Part shown: piece by piece, positions 4,493 through 64,000 of the stretch
Layout: every line of letters begins with the position of its first letter
How positions within the stretch are numbered: position 1 is the first letter of the stretch
Assembly: GCA_965202585.1 (NCBI GenBank)
Contig: OZ241826.1
Span: 15,500,001 to 15,564,000 of the forward strand
DNA: 64,000 nucleotides
Direction: 5' to 3'
Origin: Thalia democratica
Taxonomy: Eukaryota
Made by a program: the position numbers and the translations under genes
The notes under the pieces: generated by a model
What the model was told of the DNA's origin: nothing
Seen by the model: the letters and a program-made list of their open reading frames with translations, nothing else
Databases searched by the model: none

Positions 4493-4994
4493 AGGTCAAA
4501 TATGCATTAAGGGACACTTTTGCACGAATACACTTTTGCACGGAAGTGTTAATAGAAAGTATAAAAATAGAATAAATAAAAACGAAGAAACAAAAAGATG
4601 AATTAATAAAAAAAACAAATAAGTTACCGACTGAGGGTTAGCGGTAACAGTGACAGCAAAACTAGATTAGAAAAATGAGTTATAAATTAAAAGTATAATA
4701 ATAAAGATAAATTTGTTAAAAAAAAAAAAACAAAGAACAAGGGTTAGTAGTAACAGTGATAGCAAAAGTGGTAATAAAAAAAATAATTAATAAAATTAAT
4801 TACAAAAAAAAATAAGTTGTTAGAAAAAAATAAGAATTAAAAGTTACAAACAAGGGTAAGGGGTAACAGTGAAAGTGAAAAAAGTTAACATTGATAAAAA
4901 ATTTAACTTAATTAAAAACAATTTAAATTGATAAAAACATAAAAATAAAAAACTAAGCTGTGCAAAAGTGACCTGTCGTGCATATTTGAATCCT
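4493..4994. mobile_element. Foldback-like MITE, family A, copy 2
   Basis: Ends AGGTCAAATATGCA and TGCATATTTGAATCCT. Subterminal CACTTTTGCACG units. Three copies of the central GGGTWAGNRGTAACAGTGA motif. Confidence 0.8.
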
Positions 4995-6578
4995 ACCAGA
5001 AAATTTTAGAAGCACAGAAAAAAAAATTAATACAACTCACATTAATAATATATTATCGTGTCTAGCCTTGTTATATTTATATTTGCATTATAAAAAACCC
5101 GTTTTAAGTAGGTCATCGTAAACATTCACAGTTATCAATGAAACGATTAAATATTGATTAGTTTAATGATAATGATAGCTAATACAAAATACAATCAACT
5201 AGGATAAACTTTAAAGACTATCTTTAAAATTTTATTAATTAAGTTTTTTCAGGTTGTTTTTTAAAGCATTCCGTTAACATATCAAACATTTAAATAAAAT
5301 TGCAGTGGAATACTAGTCCATTTACTAAATGAAACCATGTATAGAAATTTGACATTTTAATTCAGAGTTTTCCATACTTTCTTTCATAAAACCCTTGCTC
5401 AAAAAATTAATGTTTAATACGCCTATAACTTTTTCTTTTGCTCTTCATCATTAATTCTAAAGTATCTAAGGTAATTTTTAAATTATGGCCTTATACTCTC
5501 CCCCCTTTGTAGCTTGTGGTCCCCTAAATTTTTCAAATACCGCTATTTTGCAGAATCTAATTTAAATGGTAAAACACGAAAATTATATTAAATATAAGTA
5601 AAAACTATCCAATAGATATAAAAAAACAGTACTGATAATCAACATTGGCTAACAAAGTAAATTAAAAATAGTCTGATTTATTTTAAACTTATATTTTTTA
5701 AATCAATATGACTTCTGTAACATTGTGTTTAAAAAAAAATTGCATAAATATTGGCCATTATAAAATGTAGAATTATGTTATTTACTTAATTAATTTAATT
5801 AGCTAACCATTTTTTTTAAATGGTTTTAAATCTGATTTTTTTAATGTCACATTTAAGACAAATTTATTGTCTTTAATTGTAAATAATCATCATTAGTTAA
5901 AATATTTTTTTGTTTAATTTATAAAATTATATACTGTCAACTTTATAAGAATATATCATTTATAATTCTTAAGTAATATTTTCTTATAAAACGTTGTAGA
6001 TCAACTTTTAAGTGAACAAAATTAAAATAAAAAATAATAAAAGAAGCTATGTTATTGAACAAATAAAAATCTGTCAAGAATTAAAATCATTTTTTAGTTA
6101 TGTTTATTACAATGTTTTAAAAAACAGCCTTAAAAATATATGTAAGTGCTAATGTTATACTATATGTTTCTAGTGAGCCAATATTTAAAGTCTAAAGAAG
6201 CTTTCACTTTGAAATTTAGAATAATTAAAATATTACTAAAATAATTTTTTAAGAACTAAAATATTAACTATTATTCAAAAGAATAATAAAAATAAATGTT
6301 CTTACAAGGACTTTCATTTTAAATTAGTATAAGTTTAGTTTCGCTTTTTAAAATTGAGTAATCAATAAAAACATGTTTAAGATCAAGGAAATTAAACATT
6401 AAATTAAGTAACTGTACTTAATTTTATTATTTTCAATGTAGTAGTGTAATTGAAGAGCTTTAGATTCCAGACAGTTTAGATATCCTTATAGAAAAACTTC
6501 ATTATAAAAAAAGGCGATTACGGCATATACGGTGATTTCTAAACTGAAAAACTGATTGTGTTGTAGTTGTCACTAAAG

Positions 6579-7297: not shown

Positions 7298-10200
7298 CAT
7301 AAAAGCATAAAGATTTTATTTGAAATTTTTCACTTCACTCGTTTTACAAAATATAGTGATTTGTGTTTCAAAGAATATTGATTGTCGCATTTTTTAGAAT
7401 TTGTTAGTAAGTTACGCATGTGGCTTATGCGTACTTTATACATATCACTACTGTATACGGTTTTTTTAAAGTACGTCATACATATTTTACTATAGAAAAT
7501 GTAAACTAGCACGCTTTTGAGTTTACTGATAAATTCAAACCGAAATTTAAATTATTAAGTTGTTTTGAAAAAAAAAGGAGCACCAAGTATGCAGTTATTT
7601 TTCATTTGTGTTTGAATTCAAATCAAAGTACTTTACAAAAATTCATCTCTTTTTAACAAACTAAGTTGAAGCAATGTATTGTTTAAAGGCTCTTAGTGTT
7701 TGTAAATCTTTAGAAACCTAACAGCTTATTTATATAGTTTAAACAGTTTAAACAAAACAAAGTTGTTATTAAAATCTTATAATTTATGTAAACAAAAACT
7801 TATCAAGAACCGAATAAAGCAGCAAGTAAAATACCTTGCATTATTATTTTTGTTTTCAAAGTGTAAAATCAGCTGAAAAAACTTTAATTACTATTTATAT
7901 CAATCCTAGTTAAACTTAAATAAACGTAGTTTTACTGCAGTTAATAAATATATAAAATGACTATAGTTCAAAAGGAGTACATAGGTAGTAAATGATTGAG
8001 TAATTTTGTTCAGCTTTATTTTATCAAAATGTAATAGAGCTTTTTTTATTTTTTAAATGATGTTTGCTAATCAAAACACAAAATACAGAAAGAAAAGTGT
8101 GAATCACAACTATGGTCATTAGATTTGTGTAGAAAGACATTCTGTGATCAGCATCATATGGTATATTTTATAAACATTGCTTAGAAGAAAAATGTATTTT
8201 GAAATCAAATTTACTTCATAGAAAAAGATAAAATAATAGCTTATGTGAATCTTTTAGTTTCTATTATTAGTTTTGTAGAAGTATATGAATATAAAATATA
8301 AACATAAAATTATGTTATTTATTCAATTGTTTTGAAAATTAGTGATTTCTTAACTTAATCAAACTAAACACTTTAAAAAATTCAACAATTCTTATACTTA
8401 TTATTTGAAATACTAAAATATCTATTTTTTAAATAACTTCAAATCATTCATTTCTATGTTTTTAAGAAGAAAGAATTGAATAATTCAGCTAAATTAATTT
8501 TACCTACTAATAATTAATTACAAAAAAAAAATGAAATATGTATAAAAAAAAATTTTCTATAAAAGTTTCTATTAATTTAAAAGTTATTTTTGCTTTTCTT
8601 GATTAGTAACTAAAGTGAAAACAAATGCAAAAAAAAAAAAGATAAGATTAATAAATTAATTAAAAATTAATTATAAACAAATTAATTTTGGCTTTATGAC
8701 TACTATGATATCATAAAGCTGCACTATAAGTAATAAGTAAAAATTACTTAAAAATTTGACTACTAAGTAAGATGAGCAAAAATAACTTTTAAAATTAAAA
8801 GAAACTTTTGTCGAATAAAGAAATTTTGAATAATTTTCAATCTTTTATTGTTTTAATATTATTAGTAGGTAAAAGTTGTTAATCTGCCATAATTAAGTCT
8901 TTCTTCCTAAAAACATACAAATGAATGATGCTAAATTTTTTTTTAATTATTGTTGTAATACAGTTGTAAACGTTACTATGTATTAAGATGTTTTTTGAAG
9001 TATTTGTTTCCTAATCTTTTCAAGTATAAAAAAATTGGTATATATTGCATAATTAATTGTTGCAAACAACAGCACATTTTCATTAGTTAAGCTGTAATGT
9101 TTTAGAGATTTTTATAATATAAAGTAACATAATAATAAAAAATAATTAATTATAAACTATAACAAACTAACATTAAACTTAAACTAAAACAACAATTGAT
9201 ATACTTTTGATTATATTATATAGTGTAACTATGTACATTACTTCAAATTTTAAAATGCAGATATGCTCACTTTATCATTACGCCACCTATATTTCAAATT
9301 AAGCAGGACTCAAATTTGTAATTAATTAATATAATTAATTACTTAGACAAATTAATAGTAATCTTTTAATTAATTGTCTTCATTAAAGTTAACCTTTTAT
9401 TGAATATTTCGACTTCTTTTTTTTGTTTTTAATAATTTTTTTAAACAACTTATGATAAACATTTAATAAAACTGGCAAATAAATAAATAAACAAACAAGT
9501 CTCGGCAGATTTAAACGGTTGTATATTACTAACTATAATGAAAGTTAAAAGAGAAACTAAGTTTATGTGTAAATAGTTTTGAGTCAATAATTTTTTAATG
9601 GTTTTTGTTGCTAAACCTGAGCCAGTATAAATTAGGCTTTTTTAAGTTTAGTAGTTACACAGCTAAAATCATATAGAACTAGTTTGTCCAAAAAAAAAAA
9701 TCTTTAGCTTTACCAAGAACTAAATTTAAAAATTTATATTTATAAAGCTACTTTGAATAAAATCTATATGTTATACTTTTAACTTAAAATTTCTAAAACT
9801 GTAAAAGTTCCGAACATCTTTATAAACGATATAAACAATTACAAGTGTTACAAAATTTAAACGTTCAAGTATAACAATTAACAACACTTTTTAGTTAACA
9901 ATCTGTCGAAATTTGATAAAAAATAAGTAGTTGTTTTCTTTTAAAAATTATTACGTTATAAATTGATCATAGCTTCAATGTGTTACATATTAGTTTCAAA
10001 CTCTATAATTTCTAACTTTATAAAGTTTTGTTTTTTAAATCCATTAAACTTCACAATACCTCACTATATACCATGATTCAATTTTTTGAATATATAGGTT
10101 ATAATTTATTAAATTATAGTTAAGGGGTTTTTACCATTAATATTTTTCTTAATGGTTTCTTTTTTTTCTTCAATTTAATTTTGTCAAAATAAAAATATTT

Positions 10201-11419
10201 CAAACAAATTCTAAATTATTTCTTATATTTATTTTTATTATTTTATTACAGATCTAAAACTTGAAAATCCGCTCTTGGTGAAACATATTAATTGTTTTTC
10301 TTTAAAGTTATAAATTACTAAAGAAATAGATACTTATACACATGTCATTTAATTTAAAAAAAAATAATTTAATGGTTTCAAAAAATGTTTTATGTTGTCT
10401 GAAAATCTTAATATTTTCCTCTTGTCAAATAACGACTTTTAATAATGTTAAAGATTAATAACTTGACGTATGCTTTTAATTATAAAATTGTATATGGCTA
10501 TAGATTTCATCTTAAACCACGTTTAACTGCAATCTTTATTATTTACATATGAGTAATAGTTTAAACTGTTTCTGTGTTCACAATACCACAGTAAGAGGAC
10601 AACTTTGTTTGAAAAACCTGAAAGTGCAGACTGTAAACTTTTTTGATAAAATTAATCTTTTTTAAATTGTTAAGATATTTTAAGAATAAAAACTGTTTAG
10701 CGACGCTTATGTTGGTTAATAAATTTCGCTTTTACTGTTTATTTCATTTAGGTAAATTAAAAGGGTTTAAAAAAATCGCTTTTAAATTCTAAAAAATGCT
10801 TTAAACTACTTTATTAAACTAATGAAAGTTACTTTGTTCAATTACTGTTGTTTTTTTAATAATCACAACTGTTGTTGAAAAACTAATAGATTTTTAAATT
10901 AGCTATTTTTATTATACATTTTAATATCAACTTAAATCAGACTAAGGTTTTCTATACAATGTTTTATAATAAACTTCTTGTGTAGTTTGTTTGAGCAAAT
11001 GTCAAAAAGTTATACTACATCTATACAGTAATTACATCTAGCTCTCAATTCTCAATCTAAACACATTTAACTTACTTAATTGCCCCTTACATTTTTTACC
11101 CAAACGTACTACAAAAGTTACTTCTTAAACTTTTTTTATTTTTTTTAAATATGAAACCTACATATTTCAAAATATTATAACAACTTACAATCTAAAGCAA
11201 TCTTTTTCCACTTATTTTAAGGATGCTCTAAAATATACAAAATAGTATTAAGATGAAAATCAAATGTTTCAAACTTAAGCATATTAATAACAATTGATGC
11301 AACTGCTTTATTTAAACCAAGATACAATTTCCAACAATTTAGTTCCACAAGTTTACTTTAAAAAAAAAACTGGTAATAGTAATTGTTTTCAGGGTCATAA
11401 AGTACGAATTAATTAATTA

Positions 11420-11690
11420 TAATTTATAGATTTTTAGGATGGGTAGAAGTATAATATGCAAGAAGGGAAAATTTTGCACGAAGGACAACATTCATATGGA
11501 GAATTATTTGCACGTGCAGTGACTTTTGCACAATACAATCAGTTGAGCTTGTGTCTTAGAGTTTAATCATAGCACACTTACCAAAACTAAAAAACATTTC
11601 TTAATCAACATATAATCACTCTCAGATTCTAGAATTTCCTCCATGACATACATTCGGTTATCATTGTCGTTATCAACAATGCTTCTTATA
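11420..11690 (-). pseudogene. Decayed paralog of the PARP-like gene at 19548
   Basis: Minus-strand translation YVMEEILESESDYMLIKKCF matches YSIEELSPKQKDYKLIKKCF (11/20 identical). It is followed by a stop, a MITE fragment, then KIYKL* (paralog KIYRV). Confidence 0.6.
11436..11533. mobile_element. MITE family A, truncated left arm
   Basis: AGGAT...AATATGCA start followed by TTTTGCACG units. Confidence 0.6.
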
Positions 11691-13248
11691 TTTTGTAAGT
11701 ATTAGTTAGTTGACAACAATTTTCTTTGTTTGATGTATAAAATTTATTCGTAAAGATCATATATACCTTTTTAATTTCTGTAAAGATAAATTATAAAAGA
11801 GTACATTTTATTTATAATTTGTCTTTAGTAGTTTTACACTTATTTACTTATGTTTATAAACTAAACTTAGGTAGCATTTTTTATCTAAATAAAGCATAAC
11901 TGAATATGTTATTTAAAACTTAAAAGTAAACACATTTTATCTTATACATACATTTTTATACTTAACAGCTAAAATTTTTTATTTAAACATATTTATACGT
12001 TAAATTTATTAATGTTATTTATTTTAAGCTTTGTTAACCAGTCTATCTATTAAATCAAATACTTATTTATTTTAAAAGTTTGGTTTTAATAAAGATAGAT
12101 AGTTTTGTTCAACATTATAAAAAACATCTCTACTTTTTTTAAACTTACCACAATAAGGTAATTTAATTCGAATAAGAACTTTGAACGCAGGTAAAAAGTT
12201 TTTATTTAATAAGAAGAGCTTACCTAAAGTTATTGTTTGTTGTACTAATGTTTATTAAACGACCTAAAATGATCGCTCAAAAAGCTTGGTTCAAGGAGAA
12301 AAAAATATTTAGATCATCGAGTCATACACCAAGGTTACAGCTTATTATCTTTTCAAAAACCTAAAAGTTTGTAATTAAGGGTAGAGAGTGTTGTATCGAA
12401 ATTTAGTTATCATTTATAACTAAGTATTAAACTAGATTAAGACCAAAAAAGTGAATTGCAGCTTCATATTAAATTAATCAACCGGATGCGGTCAAGCGTG
12501 ACATTTATATATATAATATTTTACTAAAAAAAAAGTTTTGGCTTTTTTCTGTCCACTATAAAAACTGATCACGTCACTTCAACTATTCTACCAAGAATTT
12601 AACAGAGTGAAGCTTAACAGTAGTTTAACAGTTAACTAATGACAGACAGTGCTTTATTTTTTAAGTGCTTTAATACTACCAGCGCTTTAAGATTTAAATT
12701 TAACTAAAATTAAGTTTAAGATTTTAATATGTTAGTTTTTTCTTAAAATAAAACTAGAAATAAATATTCAATTGTCTAACGATACTTAAATGCAAAGAAC
12801 CTTAAACAATTAAGTTAAGAAAAAGTTTAAATGTCTTTACAAAAATAAACTCTATAATTTCTTAGTAGTTAATAATGATTAAGAACTACAGATTGATAAT
12901 GGAAATGAGTAGTTGGAGTTAGATAAAAAATTAAATTTTATTTAAACTAAAAAAAAACTAAAAATCTTGTAATTTAAATCCCTGAAGAAAAATTTTCAAA
13001 ACCTTGAGAAAATTTGCCGAAAACATTTGGCAACTGTGTTTATAAGGTTTGCAAAATCTTGTGCTGTGGAAAACATTTGTTTTCTAATTGAAGTTTTGCT
13101 ATATGCTCTAAGAACTATATTACAAGTAACCAGAAATGATTATAAAATGGTAAATTTGTAAGAATTTAAGTTTTAAGAACTGGTAAAGTTTTCTAATTTG
13201 GTTTAAAACTTACTTATAATTACTTTCCAGCTATTTAAACCTTCTAAA

Positions 13249-40533: not shown

Positions 40534-43500
40534 TTAAGCGAGGCCGAATCCAACCGTGCACTCGTTGATTGCTTGGAGGAGTTTCTCGCGAAGTTTGTCG
40601 TAAGTTTCGTACAACGGCAAGTCCAACTGGTTGAAACTGAAATAAAAAAATTGCTTATAAACAAATAAATTTGTTATAACTTATGCTAAGTAATTTTTAA
40701 GGATGCAAAGAAAATAAATCTTCAGTTGATTTATTTTCATCTCAAAGTTTTAGGATTTAAAAATGTTTAACATTTCAGATTAGTAAAACATGTGTAAAAA
40801 ACTTGAACTTACAAACAAGTATTTCATTTATAACTATTTTTGATTTTTAAATTAATATTTCAATTTAATCAAAAACATTTTAATTTCTAATGATAAACTA
40901 ACCAAGTATGGGCGCAAGGTAGCCGGTCAGTGGACCTGTTGTCCATTGAAATTTGGAATAACTGGACGCCCGTCATGCCTTCCAACCTCGAAAAACCGCC
41001 AATCGGCACTTTTGACGTTCCTGTGAGGAAAAACATTTAAATAAGAACAATAACTTGGTAAAATTTTTAAATTGCAAGTCATATTTTGTTTTCCACCAAT
41101 AGGGACCTTTTGATGTTCCTGTTTAAAATACAAGATTTAAATTAAAATGAACTTTTAATACCAATCTGTGAGTGGTAACAAAGTTCCTTTAAAAAACGTG
41201 GAGTTAAAATGTGGCACTCTTATGTATAATGGTGGTTTGAAAAATAAAATAGTTTTCAACTACAATATTTATTATAAAAAAATCAATTAATTTATATATT
41301 AAGTTGAAATTAAATCCAGTGAAAGTTAGGATTTATAAACTAAGTAATAAGAATTTAGTAAAGCTAATCATTAAACTTTTGTGTTAAGCAAAACAAGTGG
41401 TATCAATTCAGTTGAATATTTTTACAAACGAAGATAAAATTTTGTTTTTTTTTTGTGTTTTGAAGAATCTAATTTAAAATTTGTTTTGAAGAATAAAGAT
41501 AATTTTAAATGAAAACTTTAAATATCAAAGAAAACAGCTCATAACATTAGAAGAGTTTAGAAAATCTTTAGCAGAAATTTAAAATCTAACTACGCATAGA
41601 GCTAGATAAGAAAAAGTATGAATTATTAAATAGTTTCTTCACATTTCAAACTCAAGTAAAACATCTACTGCTTTTAACAGGTGATTTGCTTAGATGCATT
41701 TAAAAAAGATTATAATAATTCAACAATACTTGCTTAAATATTATTACTCGTATGATTTTACTAACAAGAAACTTTAAACTTGCAAAATATACAACCAACT
41801 AACAGATGTTTGAAAAATTTAGAAATTTGATTTTGTGCCAATTTAATTCAAAACTTTATATAATAAATATAACCTAGATTTTAATTGACAAATTGAATTT
41901 TTTTTAATAGACAAAGCTATTTTAGTAAGCATAAAACCTTAAAAAAGAAAGGAAATTTGTTGGAACATAAGTGATAATTCAAGTTTCAACGATAAAAATA
42001 CATAATAAATAACCAGTAGGAAAATAATGTGTAACAACTTAGAATAAAATATACTTATTTGCTCTTAATGATAACTAGTAACCAACTAGTAGCAAACTGA
42101 AGAAACTACATTAGTTAGAAAAGCAAGAGAATTGTGCAAAGTTTGACTTCTTAATTTAATTATTACTGAATTAAAATAAACACTCAATATAACCAACCAA
42201 TAGTATAAAGGAAACAAATAAGTAATTAATTTATTATAGGACTTAAGGGCAACAATAATTTTAATGTGAATCATAAAATTGAAACTTACGTTCTGGTTTA
42301 ATAGTTATTTGCCAACTAATAAAACAAAAGTCATTTTTCAATAAGTTTAAAACCAGCAAAAAATATTTATTTATTACAATCTAATCTAATATACCGACCA
42401 GTGGCAAATTGAAAGAATTTAGCTTTGGTAGCCTTGTAGAGACTTGAGAAAAAAATATTTTAAAACCACTAACATATAACAAAAAGTTTTATTCTTATTA
42501 TTCATTTATTCAACAAACAACCAACCGGTGGCAAATTGTAGGAACTTGGCTTTGGTGGCCTCGTCGAAGGACTTCAGGGCCCGCCAGAACCACTGCACCT
42601 GCTTGCTGGCCGTGGTGAACCTCGTGTAGGTCGTGTTCGCCTTCATGTCCGCCACGTCTATGGTGGGAAGTCCCGAGATCAAGAGCTCCAGTTCCTGCTC
42701 GTCGAACATCGAGATCAGCTTGAACGGGATCACCTGGTAGAAACCCTTCAGGAAGGCGCTGTTGAGAAAATGGAAATATTTAGTTTGTGTGGAGTCATGT
42801 TGTAATTTTTTTTGAACATTTTTATTATTTATTTATTATTTCAATATACGTAATGAATTTTAACACCATGGTTGGTAAATGAATGTTAAAAATGTGTTTA
42901 CATTTTGAAACAGTTTTATGTATTTGGTCTTTAAAATATTATAATCATAAACAGGTTTACAAGTTTCATTAGCAAGAACTTAAGCTTATCAGAAACTTAA
43001 ACCGAAAGAAGAATCAATTTCTACTTTTTTAACAGATTTTTTTTTATTTGCTTGTAAACAAACTGACACTCCATTATATGTCAAACACTGAACAACTATT
43101 TCTTAATAACTTATAAACTTTAAAGTAGCACAAAAAACAAACTTGATTTGGTCTTTAATGTTGACACACATTTTGTGCTTGCAGTACAGGTACACGTAAT
43201 GTTTCTTGTTTTCCTCTGTAACTTCAATTTCGTTTCCGCCCGGCTTCAACTCCTTGTTAACCGCCATTCCGAATTCACTTTCCTGTGTGACGTAACAGTT
43301 TTGTTATTATGACGTAAGAGTTAGATTAAATGTTAGGTATAACTCTAGCATGTAAAAATTTGTCATGTTGCTTGAGATTAAAACAAAGTTGGTTATTTAT
43401 GCATTTACACTATTTTTATGAACCTTTGAAAAAAATTGCATCACGACTAAAAAAGAGACAATTTCCACAATAACATTAAGAGACTTGGCTAAAAAAAAAA

Positions 43501-55500: not shown

Positions 55501-58500
55501 TTTTACTTTAGCAACTTTTGTTTGTTTATGCATAAGAAATTTATTTTACATTTGCAAAAAAGTGGGCTTCACCTAAATGTAACGTTTTATAAAAATGTTT
55601 GCTCAAGTTTGAAAAGCCAAATTTTATTGAATTGAACAAAATAAACATTGCTATTATGTTTTAAAGAATAAAATTTACTGTAAAAATATATTATAGAGCT
55701 TCAACAAACTTTTATAGCTCTTTAATCTTATGAAAACTAAAATGATTATAATGGTTTCTGATAAATTTTTAGACTGGTAATATGGAAGTATGGGAAAAAA
55801 TGACTTGGAGTTTGAAACAATATTCACATACTTTAAGTTCCTTGTTAAATATTTGGCAATATATTCAATATAATATTAATATAAATTTTTTATAACTTGA
55901 TTAAAGAAATAGTCTTTTTTTTTCAACTGACAATTAAAAATAAACAACCCACCATTGAGTTCCTTGCTCTTATATACTTAACTTATACAACATTTTTCAG
56001 CTTCTAAATGTTTTGTTAAACTGCTCACTTATTTTAAGTTCTCAATATATATTTAAAACACAAGATAACAAACGCACCATTCAACTCCTTGCTCTTCTTG
56101 TTGGTGCTGGCAACCAGTTGCTGGGGCTGAACGAAATCGGCGGGGAACACTTTGCTGAGCATGTTCAAGCAGTCGATGGCGTGCCTGGCCACCAGCGGCG
56201 CCGCTTGCGGGTGGATGAACAGCTTCTTCACCAACCTCTGCGACGAAGACTTCTTGTTCGAAGATTGCGATGGCACCTTCGCTACCTGAGTTGGAAGTTT
56301 TTAGTTTTATCAGTTGGAAAAATTTATGCTCTATTTAGCCTGTACACATTTCATGTTTAAACATAATATAAATTGTGTTAAGCAAATAACTATTTGGTTC
56401 TTAAAGTTAAGTTAAATAAAAGTGCATTATTGTCTAAATACAAAGTAATAACTTCTTCTTATTTGTGCATCTAAAAATAATATTAAAGACTTGTTTTAAC
56501 AAAATATAGACTTATATAAATTTATAAAGAGGTTATAACATTAAATATTTTTTTCAACAAACTTGGAAAATGGAAGCCCTGGCACCCAAAGCGCCGTCCA
56601 GCTTGATCGACATCCAACTGGAGGTGGCGTACTTGACGGTGGTTGCTTCCTGCTTCTTAGCCGGTTGCTTGGCAACCTTGGTGTCCCCGGAACGTTGCAG
56701 GATGGATACCAAAGTGGATACCAGCCAATCGCGGGTGGCCGAGTGGTAACATACGTTCCTGAACACTTTGTGGAGAACCTGTTGGAAAATTAACTTGTTG
56801 AAAGGTAGACATATAAGAATATTATCTATGACTTTTTATATAAGTTATTAATTGAATCTTTTGGATATGATTAAATACTTTGAACGAAGTTTCATTTGCT
56901 TTTCAACTTCAAAAAGCCCACTTAAACTAATTTAAACGTGACTTAAGGTAAAAAAAAAAGCATGTCCATTTTTTTATTAAAATGGATTAATTTTCAAAGT
57001 CTTTACAGAATTACTTCTAACTTTTTTATGGCTGTTACTTTAAGCATTGAGAATATTAAGGTACAAAACAACCGACCTGAACGTTCAACTTGGAGTCTTC
57101 TTGCACGAACAGCAGCAGCAGCAGGTGGGACAGCGACTCGTGATCGAGGACCTGCCTGGACTGGAACGTCTTGTCCCCATTTCCGGCCTGCGCGCCCTGG
57201 CTCCCCTGGTGGTACCTGAGCGCCCTCCTGCGGCCGCCCGCAACGCCGAAGTCGACCAGCATGCCGCCTCTGTCGCGGTATCTGTGGTCAATTTCTGCGT
57301 ACCTTCTGGCGCATACAAAAAAGTGGGTTTAGTTTGGTCGGATGTTGCTTGGTTTTTGAGTTTTTTATGTTTTTTTTAATGAAATAATAAACAACTAGTT
57401 TTGTTTATTTGAATTGAATAGTGGATAAAATCAAGAAAATTTTGATGTTTTAGAGATGCATACAAAAAGTGGGTTTGGTCGTCGGATGTTGCTTAGTTTT
57501 TAAAGAACTTAATGGTGATTTTGAGATACTTGAGATAAATTGTTAAACAGATTTTTTTTTTAATTCCCTTTTTGTTTTAATTTGATGGAGAAAATCAAGA
57601 AAATTTCGATTGATACAATCAAAAACTAAACAATTTTGTAAATTATCAAACTTATGTATTAAGCAATGCGCGGTATCTGTCGTAAGTTTCTGCGTGCCTT
57701 CTAGTGGAAGCGTACAAAAAATACGGGTTTAGTCGTTGGTAGGATGATGTTTAGTTTTAGAGTTTTTCTTTGCTTTTTTTTTAAATTAAATAATAAATAA
57801 CTAGTTTTGTTTATTTGAAATCAGCGGATAAAATCTAGAAAATTTCGATATTTTTGTCTTTGCCAAGTATAACGAACTTGATTTAGTTAAAAAGTAACCA
57901 CACTTGTAAACGGAAGTCCCAAACAAAAATAAGTATATCTTAATAATATTACGTCATAACACCAACCTCTGCAAATGTTCGGTGACGTTCCTGTGCTGCT
58001 CCATCTGCCTTCTCTCGTTCTCCGCCCTCAGAGACCTCGCTTCTTCCTGGAGAGCTTGCGGCAGTTGGGCGATCTCTGAATCTTCCATCTCACCTGGTTA
58101 ACATTGTTATGATTATTATGAGGTCATTTCACATAGAAAAAATAAATTTTTAGGCTTACAGTCCTTCTGTGACCATTGCTTTGAACGTGAATAATTTGAA
58201 TTAGCTATGTATCTATATTTAATTACATATGCACTTATGTTATTATTAGTGTACTTCCACTAAAATCTTATGTATTATTATTAGCTACGTCATAGTTTAG
58301 AAGTTTTTTGTGACCATTGTCAGCTAAAAATAGTTTGTAAATGCATTCCTTATCGGAAATTCTGTGATATAAGCATGTTCTAATGTATTTCCACTATCTA
58401 TTTTTATTTTGTGTTAAGTATTGTTATGTATTTCCACTAAAATCTTATGAATGTATTTATCTTAAAAAAGTTATGCACTATAATCTTATTACATATGTAT

Positions 58501-61500
58501 TATGTATCATAAGTGTTAATTATGACTTATACCAACCTTAAAGTATATACTTATCTAAAAAAATTATGCACCTGTATTTAATTGATACGTACTTATTATT
58601 ATTTATACCAACCTAGCAACTGCCTCCTCAAATCAGGTTCAAGTTGGTGGATGAAGGAGGAATTGTCCGCTGAAGGTTGCGTCGCTTGATTGAATGCTGC
58701 GCGTTGCTCTTCGTGCTGCGAATTATCAGTTTAAAATAAAACACAACATTTTTTACTGTTATTATAATTAGATGAGGAATACAAGAAGTGTTTGAATCAA
58801 AATGGTCATATAATCAAGTAGTTTTAAAAATCATAAAAATCACAATACAAGTTGTTCTTTCTACTAAAAAAAGATGAGCTTAAATCATCTTTTTCAAGTT
58901 TTATATTAAATAAAGACAGTTTTATAGTTAAATCAGATTTTAAATCTCATTGATAATATAAAAGACTTGAATCATACAACTTGACTTCAATAAAATTTTA
59001 ATTTCAAACAAAGTACTACCAACCCTCCTCTGCTGATCAATGACTTCTTGTTGGATGTTCTGAGGGAGGGCGTTCAAGAATTCAGGGTTCAATCTGGTGC
59101 TGAGAACGTTCGCTTGCCCGCTACCAGATTCTGCGTTTCTGTTCAGTGTGTCCCTGTGGAAAGAAAATTAAACTGTTAGTGTTCAAAAAATATAAGTATA
59201 GATGTGTGAAGATAATGATGTTATGCTTTCTAATAATATTATTTTTAAGCTTAACGTACTAAAAAGCTCAAAATTTGCAAAAAAAAAAAAAAAATCAAGT
59301 AAAAAAGATAATGATAAGTTTCATAATAGTGTTTACTTTTTAAGGTAATGTTAATCGATTTAAAGTCAGTATTCAATAGATATTAGTATAGATTTGTGGA
59401 GAAAATGATGTTATGTAAAATTTGTATGTAATAATCTAACATATGCAACACCTACTACTCTTGCATTTAGTTAAAAAAATTCAAAATGCTTCTTATATTT
59501 TTTTTGTTAACAAAAGGTTTCAAAATTTGCAAAAAAAAAAGATGACAGTTAAACTTGTAATAGTTTTTACTTTCTATGACAATATTAATCAATGTAAAAT
59601 CAGTGAAACAAAATATCTGTGTCGTAACAAACTTTCAATTATTCAAAAATCAACAAAATATACCTGATAATTTCAGCTCTGACGTCTTGGGGTACTGCGA
59701 TGAGAAATTGGGGGTCGACGTTGTTCCACACAGTAGGACCGTCGTCTACCTGATTTGCTTGCTGTTGATTGGACGGTTGATCAGATGCTGCTTGTTGATT
59801 GGTTGCTGCATCTGATGCAGGTGGCTCTGTAAAGAATCGTGATTTAATGTATAATGTATATCATTTGTTTTTTTTTAACTAGTATATTCTTTTTGGTTTA
59901 CACTGAAATAAACTCCCGGAATGAATAATTACTTATTTTTTAAATCTTTTTTTTTTCGTTCTAACAAGTTATGTCTACATTTTTCATTTATTTTAAGGTA
60001 TTACATTTACCTTACTCAAATAAAAATTAATTATTTCAAAACTTTTTTGGATTCTAGGCATTATCTTATATGCACAGGCAATTAATACTTTAATTAATTT
60101 TTTTTATAACTATTATTAGAAAAACACCATTTCACAAACCTTGTTGCTGAGATGGGGCGGTGGTAGTTTGGGGTTCCTGGGTAACCGTGTTTGATGGTTG
60201 CCCTGGTAACTCGGCGGATGAATCCCCCGTGTCCATGGGTTGAGCGTCAGTCACATCCCTATCAACATCTGTTTGATAAATATTAAAGTTTAATATTTTG
60301 TTTTGGGTGTTTTTTTAATAAAATATATTTAAACTTACTTTACACAACTCAGCCCTTTGGCGAATAGGGCCGCAACAAAATTAGGCTTTCAGTTGAAGAA
60401 GTTTTATTCATTATTTTCAGTTTTAGTTTTATATTTAAGTTTATATCTAATAAAAAATACTTGTTTTATCTCGAACTAACATTTGTGCTTAAACATGTTT
60501 CTTAGTGACAAATACAAAAAAATATGTACTTAAAAAAGATAAACTTAATTTCTAAAGAAGTTTTCTTATGATGATGGACTAAAATTTCTATTTATTATTT
60601 ACAAAACACAACAAAAAAAAGGAAATTTTATTTTCAATAGAAGCTTTCTTACACAGATGAGAAGATTAGGGTTTATATATATGAGAAAAAAAAATATAAA
60701 GCTTTAATTTCAACAGAAGCTTTTAGACGGGGAGATTAAAGTTTTGATTCATTTTACCAAATACAACAAAAAGATGTTAATTTTCAACACAAGCTTATAA
60801 AGGGGGAGATCAAAAGCTGTATGTATAATACTTAGACAACAAGCATAAAGAATAAAATTATTTAAACAGAAGCTTACAGACTGGGAACGTTTTCATTTAT
60901 TATTTTAACAAATGCATATATAAAGTTTAACTTCAACAGATGAGGAGATTATCGTTCGACACAAAAGCAAACATGTTGCATCAGGAAAAGCAAACATCAA
61001 AAAAAAATCCAGCGAGCAAAACCGTGCGGAAAAAGAGTGAGAAATTGCGTCACACAAAATGAGAGCGAGAGATGTTGGAACGAAAGTTTTGAACTTGGGA
61101 TGCGAGAGAGGGCTTTCATAAGAGCTCTCTCTCTCGTTTATTTGTTTGCACAGAACATCAAGTGATAGGAAGTGCTGAAGTTACAAACGGTGCTGACACA
61201 GTCTGTACAGAGGTCAGTACAGTAGATCAGTTGAAATTTGATATGATTTGCACTGAAAAGTCGCTTTTTCTTCATATTTTTGTTCAAACTAGTAGGTGAA
61301 ACAGCAAGAAATTAACAATTCAGAAAGAAAACTCATCAATGTAGGAGGTGCTAGCCCAGCATGGGAGGTAGAAAACAATATAGTCTAATTGTTTTTATTA
61401 TTAATTGACTATATTACCTTCTACCTCACTTGCTAGGCTGCTTTATTTTAATGATGAGTGCAAATAATTGAGAAAGTAAGGTAAAAGTAAGAAGAAAACT

Positions 61501-63672
61501 GACGTACAAGTAAAAACTGTGACAAATTAGGACATGAACTATCCAATCAATACTTAAAATTCTAGTTTAAAAAACTTAATGCTCGATAAAAAGTGAAATA
61601 TTAAAGTTCTTTAGTCAAAAAACCAGTTTACGAAACTTAAAAATTTTACACTAAAAAAAATTCTTCAAACAAATGAACTAGTTTAAAAATCATTCAATTG
61701 AAAAACTCAACTAAATAAAACCAAAACTAAAACAACTTTTATCTTTCACTGTGTGAATGTGAGCTTGTCAGGGCAAGGTAGTAGTAAACCAGTTCACAAA
61801 AAAAATATATATATATATATATATACCAACCCGGAACTGATTTAACCTACTACCTCACCGCGACGCCAAAAGCTCCTTCTGTGACGTCACAGTGACTCAG
61901 CCGACGTGATGACCTTGACTCCTTTGAAGTTTCGAGCGAGCCGCTTCGGCGGAGGCGGTGAAGTTTGTAGTTCGGCAAAAAAAAAAACTACAAAATCCAC
62001 TACCTCAGCAGAAACTGCACAAAATTTTAGTAAAAAAAAATAAAAAAATAAACTGAAACGAAAAGCTGCACTTGAAATTAAAAATGACGTGTGTTTTGTT
62101 CGATCGATTTTTTTTTCAAACTGACTGCACCAGCTGAAAAGTGGAAAGAACGCGAAAGCGAGCGGGCCGCCTGCAAAAGAACGCGCAACGCGAGAGAAGA
62201 GAAAAAATTGAAACGAGAGAATTAAAAAAAAACGAGAGAATTAAAAAAAAAATTGGTGAAGGAAACTTTGCGGTTTTGGTAAAGAGAGCTTTCCATTTGG
62301 AACGATTTTTTTGTGTTTCTTTAATTTTAATTTTGCGACTTTTTTTTCGGGAGATTTTAAGCCGGTTTTATTTTTATCACGACTCTCGCCTTTTATAAGC
62401 TGTGTGTGACGCAATAATAAGAAACTTGCGTCAAACGCCTTCGTGCATTGTGACGAGCGAAATTGAATTGTGCGGGTTCCAAGCTTTTATGTTTAATTTA
62501 ATAATATATATTTATAAATACAAAGGATTGTCGCTTTTTGAGCTGAAACAACTTTTTCATTGTCTGCTATAAATAGATGAAATCTTTCCTCTCTATTTAT
62601 ATTAAAAGATTATACTACAAACTGTAACTAGCACAATAAAAATTTGCTGCAATGAATATTGTTTTAACAATAAAACCAACAAATATTAAACATATCAAAG
62701 ACAAAATATCTACTTAAAATCTTTTTTTCTCTTTTATTCTTAACTTTTTTATGTGTTCTCTAAAATATCATACTTCAAATATTACAACTAATATTGTAAC
62801 TTGAAAAGTTACAAAAAATAAGGAACTTTACAAAAAAACAAATTACAAAGAAAGTTTTTGACAAGGAAATGAAACATGCGAAAGTCGTGGTTAAATTGAA
62901 TCTTTTTTTTTTATTAAAAATGATTTGCAATATTTTTTCCTAATTAATTCAATAATTGCAACACAAATTAATATCTGGTTAGCACAAACCGGCTTGAACC
63001 ATTTCGAATTTCCAAATAAGGAAATGTCCAAGAAAGCGTAATACAGTCAGTAGGCGAATATGAGTTTGTTTGTTTTATTTATAAAACATACTGTCTATTG
63101 TTTTATTCTCAACATTCATTTTCTTTTGTCATTCGAACAAAAACACTTGTTTTGTTAACAATGCATGTTTCTGCAGAATTTCTTTGTTCGAAATTTTAAT
63201 ATAAATTTTTATTCGAGGAATTTTTTTTGTCAATATATAGTAAATTAAATAAACATGTGCTGTTAATGTTAAGCCGGGTCAAATTAAAAATATTCAAAAA
63301 ATTGAGTTTATTTAAATTAATTTTATGTCTAGGTTTTAATGAGAAAATCAAGCATTTTAAAATTTTATTTCAATCACAAAATTTTTTTAAATTCTTTTGT
63401 ATTGTAATGTAACTAAGTAAAATCTAGCCCATCATTTTGCACCTAAATTTTGCACCTTTTTAACATTTTTTTTAATTTAAAAGGTAATATACTTTTTTGC
63501 TAAAAAAGTTCTCGCTAACTACTTGGTCAATGTTGTGTCAAAGAGAAAGTAAAGTTTAATATGAAGTGACATATAACTAACCGTCATTTTGCTGTTGTGC
63601 ATTTTCTCCTGTCGTCGGAGGAGTTTCTGCTTGAGGAGGGTTTTCTGCGGAGGGCTCACCTTCAGCAGCAGT
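40534..63672 (-). CDS. HUWE1: E3 ubiquitin ligase HUWE1, 3' part (gene presumably continues beyond the window end)
   Basis: 28 GT-AG exons with consistent phases: 63582-63672, 60140-60268, 59664-59826, 59024-59153, 58613-58715, 57967-58093, 57077-~57307, 56563-56778, 56078-56285, 54965-55113, 54506-54648, 53800-54104, 53412-53543, 52985-53120, 51780-51882, 51451-51571, 50889-~51095, 50516-50622, 49890-50008, 49546-49644, 48785-49060, 46591-46657, 46169-46285, 43870-44082, 43143-43282, 42526-42758, 40903-41020, 40534-40636. HUWE1-type motifs [28 protein letters not shown] and the C-terminus LPCAHTCFNQLDLP...GFGLA*. Confidence 0.96.
43684..43899. repeat. Three 90-bp tandem units spanning a HUWE1 donor site
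   Basis: The exon-end 30-mer recurs at 43690, 43780 and 43870 (the last is the real exon). Confidence 0.9.
46651..46845. repeat. ~43-45 bp minisatellite spanning a HUWE1 acceptor
   Basis: Unit GTACAACCTGAAAAAT...TAATTATTAATTTAATT repeated about five times with decay. Confidence 0.75.
57967..59826 (-). other. HUWE1: UBM-type ubiquitin-binding repeat exons of HUWE1
   Basis: [36 protein letters not shown] and [22 protein letters not shown]. Confidence 0.8.
60335..60395 (-). mobile_element. Possible retroelement 3' tail remnant
   Basis: Isolated GC-rich TTGTTGCGGCCCTATTCGCCAAAGGGCTGAG with a GCCCT/AGGGC hairpin, ending in a GTAAAGTAAGT tail. Classification is inference. Confidence 0.3.
60560..60950. 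repeat. Degenerate tandem repeat (~60-85 bp units)
   Basis: Recurring ACAGAAGCTT...GGGAGATT-like motifs, five to six copies. Confidence 0.5.
61352..61439 (-). ncRNA. let-7: let-7 family pre-miRNA (third in cluster), mature UGAGGUAGAAGGUAAUAUAGUC at 61407-61428
   Basis: let-7 seed UGAGGUAG. The 3' arm GACUAUAUUGUUUUCUACCUCC pairs with 21 of 22 mature nt, and the flanks extend the stem. Confidence 0.9.
61765..61864 (-). ncRNA. let-7: let-7 family pre-miRNA (second), mature UGAGGUAGUAGGUUAAAUCAGU at 61836-61857
   Basis: First 14 nt identical to canonical let-7 (UGAGGUAGUAGGUU). The 3' arm AACUGGUUUACUACUACCUUGC pairs with a 2-nt bulge. Loop is ~40 nt. Confidence 0.92.
61940..62017 (-). ncRNA. 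let-7: let-7 family pre-miRNA (first), mature UGAGGUAGUGGAUUUUGUAGUU at 61986-62007
   Basis: let-7 seed. The 3' arm AACUACAAACUUCACCGCCUCCG pairs with three mismatches, and the lower stem extends. Confidence 0.88.
62080..62480. promoter_or_regulatory. Intronic CpG-rich island just upstream of the let-7 cluster
   Basis: Dense CpG (CGCGAAAGCGAGCGGGCCGC, CGCGCAACGCG) inside an AT-rich intron, 5' of the first hairpin on the minus strand. Confidence 0.45.
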
Positions 63673-64000
63673 CTGTAATAATATATTTGATTATTATGTA
63701 TCAAGTTTAAACAGTTTGTTGTAACATTTATCACAAAGAGAAATATTTGGTAATGTTCTACTTTTATTTATTTGTGTTTTTACAAGTGTATCTTTCGTAG
63801 TAGAAGTGGTAAATAACAAATTGTTACTGTTACAGTCTGAACAATATATTTGATTATACACGGTACTATATATAAAAAATATATTTATACTTAAACACAT
63901 ATTAAACAAAAAAACAATATGAGTATAGTTCATTGTTGAACTAGCAACAATTTTTTTTAATTTTCAGTTTTTTCATTAAAAACAATTTTTTTTTATTTTA

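What the first reader, a model, noticed from the sequence alone, without database searches (positions are those of the whole stretch)
61352..62017. Three divergent let-7 paralogs clustered in a HUWE1 intron
Seen: three hairpins with the UGAGGUAG seed but different 3' halves, same strand as HUWE1, in the 3.3-kb intron (60269-63581) upstream of the UBM exons. Established: vertebrate let-7f-2 and miR-98 lie in a HUWE1 intron. Inference: this linkage predates the split from vertebrates, and the paralogs here expanded and diverged independently. No miR-100/99 or miR-125 sequence was seen in the window. Whether the arrangement is already reported for this lineage needs checking.
Basis: partly seen in the sequence, partly recalled or inferred. 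Interest (0 to 1): 0.82.

Follow-up and report, generated by a model that had tools for sequence, protein, structure and literature searches.

The report
Let-7 microRNA trio in HUWE1 intron
Three real-looking let-7 family microRNA hairpins sit in an intron of the HUWE1 gene of what is most likely a pelagic tunicate, but this gene-in-gene arrangement and its shared origin with vertebrates were already published for sea squirts in 2012, so it is a new example of a known thing.

Summary
Three strong minus-strand hairpins (about 61350-62020) each carry UGAGGUAG at the start of the 5' arm. They lie on the same strand as HUWE1, in a GT-AG, phase-1 intron (63581 to 60269) upstream of the UBM exons.

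They are let-7 family precursors homologous to the "homogeneous" let-7 cluster that Hertel et al. 2012 (PMC3384580) described in a HUWE1 intron of Ciona intestinalis and C. savignyi.

I found the same cluster in two further unnamed animal contigs: five copies in L016 and four in L018. A let-7 also lies in the equivalent phase-1 intron of a shark HUWE1.

The idea that the copies diverged independently here does not hold for two of the three. H1 and H2 differ by 1-2 bases from specific paralogs in L016 and in the published Halocynthia roretzi cluster. H3 has no clear counterpart.

One possibly new detail: all three hairpins lack the GGAG (LIN28-binding) motif that shark, L016 and L018 copies keep.

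Expression is untested because no RNA run was found. The tunicate assignment is inferred, not proven.

The parts
61935..62020 (-). Hairpin H1, first in transcript order. Predicted mature 5' arm UGAGGUAGUGGAUUUUGUAGUU at 62007 to 61986. The loop is U-rich and has no GGAG.
   Evidence: Fold -35.1 kcal/mol, z -5.2. Rfam let-7 33.3 bits, full-length. One base from L016 paralog 2 and two from Halocynthia S93_67805. The 5' arm is one of only two stretches of the intron that align to L016 with E<=0.001; weaker hits cover only the shared let-7 5' ends.
61762..61870 (-). Hairpin H2. Predicted mature 5' arm UGAGGUAGUAGGUUAAAUCAGU(U) at 61857 to about 61835. It has a long terminal loop holding a (TA)n microsatellite (about 61791-61834) and no GGAG.
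   Evidence: Fold -52.1 kcal/mol, z -8.8. Rfam let-7 26.1 bits. One base from L016 paralog 4 and from Halocynthia S93_68361. The 5' arm aligns to L016. Reads appear cut at the repeat.
61350..61441 (-). Hairpin H3, the last and most divergent. Predicted mature 5' arm UGAGGUAGAAGGUAAUAUAGUC at 61428 to 61407. The stem is almost perfect with three G-U pairs, the loop is A/U-rich, and there is no GGAG.
   Evidence: Fold -44.3 kcal/mol, z -8.7. Best Rfam let-7 score of the three, 41.8 bits. The minus strand folds better than the plus strand, -42.7 against -36.0. The nearest known mature sequences are 4 bases away.
60269..63581 (-). Host intron of HUWE1: 3,313 nt, GT...AG, phase 1.
   Evidence: Donor gt at 63581-63580 and acceptor ag at 60270-60269. 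The reading frame continues from exon X into exon Y. Splicing itself was not observed.
63582..63672 (-). Upstream HUWE1 exon X, low-complexity ([30 protein letters not shown]).
   Evidence: Open frame with ag/gt borders.
60140..60268 (-). Downstream short HUWE1 exon Y: 129 nt, phase 1-1, low-complexity. It has the same position and phases as the shark's 37-residue exon, but the two sequences do not align.
   Evidence: Shark comparison.
59664..59826 (-). First UBM-motif exon of HUWE1 (…[20 protein letters not shown]).
   Evidence: tblastn to UBM1 of L001, L012 and L016. Pfam UBM hits on the next two exons.

Best explanation
This is a polycistronic cluster of three let-7 family microRNA genes inside a HUWE1 intron. 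It is the counterpart of the let-7-only cluster known from ascidian HUWE1 introns and of the vertebrate let-7f-2/miR-98 locus. Inferred mechanism: the hairpins are transcribed with the HUWE1 pre-mRNA, being on the same strand inside an intron. Drosha/DGCR8 excises them, Dicer cuts them, and the 5' arms are loaded into Argonaute. All three share the let-7 seed GAGGUAG and so the core let-7 target set. Their different 3' halves could alter supplementary pairing. Shown here: the hairpins, the seeds, the host gene and strand, the intron borders by sequence signals, cross-species conservation of the H1 and H2 mature arms, compensatory changes in the opposite arms, and the same intron position and phase in a shark. 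Inferred: expression, processing sites, co-transcription with the host, and the tunicate identity of the genome.
For: Seeds and hairpins. Full-length let-7 model matches. Host is HUWE1: the best named hits are all HUWE1, and the exon map runs from the UBM exons to the C-terminal TVGFGLA*. Published precedent: Ciona intestinalis and C. savignyi have four let-7 copies in a HUWE1-homologous intron (PMC3384580), and Halocynthia roretzi has four clustered let-7 on one scaffold (PMC5399378). New comparative loci: L016 has five same-strand hairpins between the lysine/glutamate-rich exon and UBM1, and L018 has four in the same place. L001/L018 is the window's sister in a HUWE1 tree, support 92/95. Orthology: H1 to L016_2 is 1 difference and H2 to L016_4 or Hr_c is 1 difference, against 7-8 between the window's own copies. 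Footprint: between the 3.3-kb intron and L016, the only blastn matches with E<=0.001 are the H1 and H2 5' arms; weaker hits cover only the let-7 5' ends. Covariation: partners change with the mature arm at positions 9, 10, 12 and 14-22 across 9 hairpins. Shark: let-7 at 77.8 bits in a phase-1 intron, then a 37-residue phase 1-1 exon, then UBM1.
Against: No small-RNA or RNA-seq evidence: no RNA run was shown to hold the locus, and the one read-laying run used DNA-like contigs. All three hairpins score below Rfam's let-7 gathering score, although the five L016 copies do too at 33-53.3 bits. H3 has no identified orthologue, and its nearly perfect stem could also fit a young or decaying copy. H2 carries an unusual 42-nt loop with a TA microsatellite. 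The exons flanking the intron are low-complexity and cannot be aligned residue by residue with the shark, so positional homology rests on exon order and intron phase. No named tunicate HUWE1 sequence was obtained, so the taxon is inferred.
Confidence: 0.85

Rival explanations
1. The cluster is real but has its own promoter inside the intron, so let-7 output is set independently of HUWE1 transcription.
For: In a genome of about 25% GC, short GC-rich patches lie just upstream of and within the cluster: 51% at 62100-62199 and 49% at 61900-61999. An AP-1-like TGAGTCA (61899-61893) and a CRE palindrome TGACGTCA (61889-61882) lie between H1 and H2. A marine-metagenome contig matches 61980-62133 with only 1 substitution and 3 gaps, better than other intron pieces from the same run (table 8).
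Against: The motifs lie between H1 and H2, not upstream of the whole cluster, and short motifs like these arise by chance. Same-strand intronic microRNAs are usually processed from the host transcript. No transcription start data exist.
Confidence: 0.2
2. Only H1 and H2 are functional microRNAs. H3 is a degenerating or neutrally drifting duplicate that keeps the seed by chance of recent origin.
For: H3 has no counterpart within 4 differences in L016, L018-type sequences, Halocynthia or shark, whereas H1 and H2 are 1-2 differences from theirs. Its 5' arm did not align to L016.
Against: H3 has the best Rfam let-7 score of the three (41.8 bits) and a very stable fold (z -8.7). Its three G-U pairs make the minus strand fold better than the plus strand, as expected for selection on the RNA. 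The seed is intact and every change in the mature arm is compensated in the opposite arm.
Confidence: 0.25
3. The three seeds and hairpins are chance inverted repeats in A/T-rich intron DNA and not microRNA genes.
For: The genome is A/T-rich and repeat-rich. Rfam's gathering score is not reached. There is no expression evidence.
Against: Three seeds fall in 590 nt on one strand against 0.66 expected per 64 kb on both strands. Each sits at the same place on a hairpin with z -5 to -9. Two mature arms are 21 of 22 identical to paralogs in other animals' HUWE1 introns, while the rest of the intron does not align.
Confidence: 0.02

Closest known systems
Ciona intestinalis / C. savignyi let-7-only cluster in a HUWE1-homologous intron (Hertel et al. 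2012, PMC3384580)
   Same: Several closely spaced let-7 copies, no miR-100 or miR-125, inside an intron of the HUWE1 homologue. It is interpreted as the second let-7 locus founded in the vertebrate-urochordate ancestor.
   Different: Ciona has four copies and this window has three. I could not fetch the Ciona locus, so intron-by-intron and copy-by-copy correspondence to Ciona rests on the paper's text alone.
Halocynthia roretzi let-7 cluster on scaffold S93 (Wang et al. 2017, PMC5399378, Table 1)
   Same: The paralog-specific 3' halves are shared. UGAGGUAGUGGAUU... corresponds to H1 (2 differences) and ...AUAUCAGU to H2 (1 difference).
   Different: Halocynthia has four copies, with the GUGGAUU-type copy last. 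Here the GUGGAUU-type copy is first, as in L016 where it is second of five. The host gene is not stated in that paper. H3 has no match.
Vertebrate let-7f-2 / miR-98 locus in HUWE1 (Hertel's cluster F), seen here in Chiloscyllium punctatum (L010)
   Same: Sense-strand let-7 in a phase-1 HUWE1 intron, two introns upstream of the first UBM motif, with one short phase 1-1 exon in between.
   Different: The shark copy has the canonical mature sequence, passes Rfam's cut-off (77.8 bits) and keeps GGAG before the 3' arm. The window's copies have divergent 3' halves, sub-threshold scores and no GGAG. Only one copy was found in the shark intron.
Ancestral bilaterian miR-100 / let-7 / miR-125 cluster
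   Same: Same microRNA family and seed, and polycistronic organisation.
   Different: That cluster is mixed and not hosted in HUWE1. No miR-100 or miR-125 is present in this window. Whether this genome also keeps the mixed cluster could not be checked.

Membership tests
let-7 microRNA family | Seed GAGGUAG at positions 2-8 of the 5' arm product | tested here: met
   All three hairpins carry it.
let-7 microRNA family | Precursor hairpin of microRNA size with the mature sequence in the stem and a complementary opposite arm | tested here: met
   Folds with z -5.2, -8.8 and -8.7. Per-position pairing table with compensatory changes.
let-7 microRNA family | Rfam RF00027 gathering score (53.5 bits) | tested here: not met
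   41.8, 33.3 and 26.1 bits. The five homologous hairpins of L016 also fall below it at 33-53.3 bits, so the cut-off is too strict for this clade's copies.
let-7 microRNA family | Orthology to annotated let-7 genes beyond the seed | tested here: met
   H1 and H2 are 1-2 bases from Halocynthia let-7 entries and from L016 paralogs. For H3 the test is inconclusive, with the nearest sequences 4 bases away.
let-7 microRNA family | Expressed ~22-nt RNA with a precise 5' end and Drosha/Dicer 2-nt offsets | not testable with these tools
   No RNA run was shown to hold the locus.
HUWE1-hosted let-7-only cluster of tunicates and vertebrates | Located in an intron of HUWE1 on the sense strand | tested here: met
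   HUWE1 exon map on the minus strand. Named HUWE1 hits. GT-AG borders.
HUWE1-hosted let-7-only cluster of tunicates and vertebrates | Same intron position as in vertebrates | tested here: inconclusive
   Same order (let-7 intron, short phase 1-1 exon, UBM1 exon) and same phase 1 as in shark. In L016 and L018 the cluster lies between the lysine/glutamate-rich exon and UBM1. The flanking exons are low-complexity and do not align, and a possible extra exon at 61056-61124 would shift the border.
HUWE1-hosted let-7-only cluster of tunicates and vertebrates | Contains only let-7 copies, with no miR-100 or miR-125 | tested here: met
LIN28-gated let-7 precursors | GGAG-like element in the terminal loop just 5' of the 3' arm, bound by the LIN28 zinc knuckles (bioRxiv 10.1101/202036; PMC3424542) | tested here: not met
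   Absent in H1, H2 and H3. Present in the shark copy, in L016 copies 1, 3, 4 and 5, and in L018 copies a, b and c.
Tunicate genome (taxon of the window) | Closest relatives are named tunicate sequences | tested here: inconclusive
   No named tunicate HUWE1 was among the hits. The kelch ORF hits only unnamed marine sequences. In the HUWE1 tree the window sits on a very long branch with L001 only. Support is indirect: let-7 paralog signatures shared with Halocynthia, presence in marine metagenomes, and earlier scan notes.

The most novel reading that the evidence does not exclude
In this A/T-rich pelagic lineage all three HUWE1-hosted let-7 precursors have lost the GGAG element, which sits at the same place in 8 of 10 homologous hairpins from a shark and two other animals with the cluster. 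If this loss is functional, this animal's let-7 cluster has escaped LIN28 gating, or the animal has lost LIN28. Let-7 output would then follow HUWE1 transcription alone. That would be a natural experiment on the LIN28/let-7 developmental timer in a chordate with alternating life-cycle stages.
Probability: 0.25. Interest if true: 0.45.

Novelty: new member of a known kind. Interest (0 to 1): 0.25.

Why it matters
The HUWE1/let-7 linkage is one of the few microRNA-host gene pairings that date to the common ancestor of tunicates and vertebrates. Another divergent lineage that keeps it, plus two unnamed relatives and a shark examined here, strengthens that published conclusion. It also shows that individual paralogs (the GUGGAUU type and the AUAUCAGU type) are old and conserved across tunicate-like genomes, while copy number varies from 3 to 5. 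This does not change the picture. The only part that could open a new question is the complete loss of the LIN28-binding GGAG element in this species.

Tried and rejected
1. Rfam at gathering threshold on the whole window found nothing. The permissive scan was needed.

2. RNA evidence: a search for RNA runs returned only runs of unknown kind that hold the intron itself.

3. Footprinting with the related organism B failed. It is about 90% identical across the whole intron and the output did not resolve the hairpins.

4. I first took the compact Tara Oceans HUWE1 contigs (L004-L009) and L017 for appendicularian relatives. The tree places them among arthropods, so their lack of let-7 says nothing about tunicates.

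5. L001 at first seemed to lack the cluster. Extending it upstream (L018) showed the cluster about 9 kb before UBM1.

6. L003 shows no let-7 within 5.8 kb upstream of UBM1. It branches with protostome-like sequences and was not pursued.

7. Two of the six metagenome pattern hits (L014, L015) do not fold as let-7 hairpins and are taken as chance.

8. Taxon test with the kelch ORF returned only unnamed marine proteins. Three cluster look-ups gave no named tunicate.

9. Ciona mature sequences could not be found in the held papers or supplements. The Salpa thompsoni supplements hold no let-7 sequences.

10. The similarity of 61046-61132 to the exon that follows the cluster in L016 and L018 is not significant, E 6.4.

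Full report
**1. What is there**

On the minus strand, TGAGGTAG starts at 62007, 61857 and 61428. The window holds four occurrences against 0.66 expected. The fourth (43704, + strand) is antisense to HUWE1 in A/T-rich sequence; I read it but did not fold it, and I take it as chance.

Each of the three opens the 5' arm of a stable hairpin:

| Hairpin | Coordinates | Energy (kcal/mol) | z-score |
|---|---|---|---|
| H1 | 61935-62025 | -35.1 | -5.2 |
| H2 | 61760-61875 | -52.1 | -8.8 |
| H3 | 61350-61445 | -44.3 | -8.7 |

No shuffle out of 200 folded as well. A sliding fold of 60100-63750 found no other comparable hairpin on that strand.

Rfam finds nothing at gathering threshold in the whole window. 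At a permissive threshold its let-7 model matches all three end to end, at 41.8 (H3), 33.3 (H1) and 26.1 (H2) bits against a cut-off of 53.5.

The predicted mature arms are:
- H1: UGAGGUAGUGGAUUUUGUAGUU
- H2: UGAGGUAGUAGGUUAAAUCAGU(U)
- H3: UGAGGUAGAAGGUAAUAUAGUC

**2. Host gene and intron**

Minus-strand open frames give a HUWE1 exon series, from UBM-motif exons (59826-59664, about 59167-58990, about 58730-58610) through the HECT domain to a C-terminal TVGFGLA* near 40540. A phmmer search with the exon at 56557-56781 returned proteins that their sources name HUWE1, from a parrot, a wallaby, a spider, a scorpion and insects.

The hairpins lie between exon X (63672-63582) and exon Y (60268-60140). 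The donor gt is at 63581-63580 and the acceptor ag at 60270-60269. Splicing was not observed directly.

**3. What is already published**

Hertel et al. [quoted passage not shown] They report a very similar arrangement in C. savignyi. [quoted passage not shown]

Wang et al. 2017 (PMC5399378) list four clustered let-7 genes on one Halocynthia roretzi scaffold, plus a canonical let-7 elsewhere.

**4. New comparative evidence**

*L016 and its copies.* A scan of public metagenome contigs with an H1-type pattern gave four contigs of one organism (L011, L012, L013, L016; over 99.8% identical to each other; GC 48%). L016 has five same-strand let-7 hairpins at 5447, 5721, 6230, 6807 and 6938. They lie between a lysine/glutamate-rich HUWE1 exon and the UBM1 exon. 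All five score below Rfam's cut-off at 33-53.3 bits, so sub-threshold scores are normal for this type of cluster.

*L018.* The protein search gave a 649-kb ENA contig (L001) whose HUWE1 is the window's sister in a tree, with support 92/95. Extended upstream as L018, it has four same-strand hairpins at 4938, 5429, 5595 and 6100, between the same landmarks.

*Shark.* In the Chiloscyllium punctatum locus (L010) a let-7 scoring 77.8 bits lies at 10406-10486 on the HUWE1 strand. Its intron (9386-12162) is phase 1. It is followed by a 37-residue phase 1-1 exon and then the UBM1 exon. The window has the same order and phases: let-7 intron in phase 1, exon Y of 129 nt in phase 1-1, then the UBM1 exon. 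The intervening exons are low-complexity and do not align, so positional homology is supported by order and phase, not by residues.

**5. Age of the paralogs**

| Comparison | Differences out of 22 |
|---|---|
| H1 vs L016 copy 2 | 1 |
| H1 vs Halocynthia S93_67805 | 2 |
| H2 vs L016 copy 4 | 1 |
| H2 vs Halocynthia S93_68361 | 1 |
| Between the window's own copies | 7-8 |
| H3 vs its nearest sequences | 4 |

Between the window's intron and L016, the only blastn matches with E<=0.001 are the H1 and H2 5' arms, at 22-23 nt and 95% identity; weaker hits (E 0.14-0.5) cover only the shared let-7 5' ends. H1 and H2 are therefore ancient, conserved paralogs and not local inventions. H3 is either a strongly diverged old copy or a lineage-specific one.

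Copy number varies: 3 here, 4 in L018, Halocynthia and Ciona, and 5 in L016. The order of H1-type before H2-type matches L016.

**6. Selection on the hairpins**

I took each mature position's base-pair partner from the minimum-energy folds of nine hairpins. Changes on both sides that keep the pair occur at positions 9, 10, 12 and 14-22. Examples are U-A to A-U at position 9 in H3, G-C to A-U at position 12 in H1 and L016_2, and A-U to C-G at position 19 in H2 and L016_4. H3's three G-U pairs make the minus strand fold better than the plus strand, -42.7 against -36.0, which fits the transcribed strand.

**7. A difference that may matter**

In the alignment and folds, GGAG lies just 5' of the 3' arm in the shark copy, in L016 copies 1, 3, 4 and 5 (copy 2 has GGGG) and in L018 copies a, b and c. 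None of the window's three hairpins has it. That is 8 of 10 against 0 of 3. By my own hand calculation this gives a hypergeometric probability of about 0.035.

GGAG is the element bound by the LIN28 zinc knuckles (bioRxiv 10.1101/202036; PMC3424542). The loss could reflect drift of the loops towards A/T in a 25% GC genome, or a real release from LIN28 control. I could not search the genome for LIN28, and the scan's notes hold none.

**8. Mechanism**

The most likely mechanism is a canonical intronic microRNA polycistron. It would be co-transcribed with HUWE1 and processed by Drosha and Dicer, with the 5' arms loaded. The shared seed gives a shared core target set, and the distinct 3' halves give possible differences in supplementary pairing. 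Co-transcription and processing are inferred.

An internal promoter is a weaker alternative. GC-rich patches lie near the cluster, and AP-1-like and CRE motifs lie at 61899-61882.

**9. Taxon**

I could not obtain a named tunicate sequence. The assignment rests on four things:
- the Halocynthia-type paralog signatures;
- the restriction of this arrangement to tunicates and vertebrates in the literature;
- presence of the locus in marine metagenomes;
- earlier notes of this scan that call the genome a tunicate.

In the tree the window has a very long branch (1.45), as fast-evolving tunicates would, but this is not proof.

**10. Verdict**

It is a new instance of a known, published arrangement. 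Expression is untested.

Noticed in passing
window 61000-61200, candidate exon 61124-61056 (minus strand): A GC-rich patch (42-44% GC) inside the 'intron', downstream of H3. It is better conserved in the related organism B and in a marine-metagenome run (about 94-98% identity over 60918-61240 and 61016-61210) than the neighbouring intron pieces (about 85-93%). It contains a frame-preserving 69-nt ag...gt unit (phase 1-1, [23 protein letters not shown]). This could be a cassette exon matching the conserved exon that follows the cluster in L016 and L018, but the protein similarity is not significant (E 6.4) and the acceptor lacks a pyrimidine tract.
   Followed up: partly
window 61882-61899 (between H1 and H2): Adjacent AP-1-like TGAGTCA (61899-61893) and CRE palindrome TGACGTCA (61889-61882), within a small stem-loop. 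These are possible regulatory sites or chance.
   Followed up: no
window 62100-62199: A patch of 51% GC just upstream of H1 in a genome of about 25% GC. A metagenome contig matches 61980-62133 almost perfectly. It could be a conserved pri-microRNA flank or a promoter.
   Followed up: no
window about 61791-61834: A (TA)n microsatellite forms the top of H2's terminal loop. Contigs of all runs appear cut there, so its length may vary between individuals.
   Followed up: no
window 13957-15303 (+): A 448-residue single-exon BACK/kelch-repeat ORF with more than 170 homologues at 31-64% identity. All are unnamed and nearly all come from ENA marine assemblies, which points to a large expanded family in this or related plankton genomes.
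   Followed up: partly
window 19548-20282 (+): A 244-residue ORF whose sequence looks like a PARP catalytic domain by eye (HGT...GIYGPGVYLTES). It was not searched.
   Followed up: no
L016:7375-7596 and L018:6486-6698: The exon right after the let-7 cluster is almost identical in these two otherwise divergent genomes (APAINALQQASSSLLAVSGQLEGLSF). This is unusual for this low-complexity part of HUWE1.
   Followed up: partly
protein P0103 (Anisodus tanguticus KAK4337307.1): This 'plant' HECT ligase groups with animal HUWE1 sequences in the tree, which suggests animal contamination in that plant assembly.
   Followed up: no
L010:9386-12162: Only one let-7 seed and one Rfam hit occur in the shark's HUWE1 host intron, whereas mammals have two copies there (let-7f-2 and miR-98). 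The neighbouring intron holds a 5-kb assembly gap.
   Followed up: no
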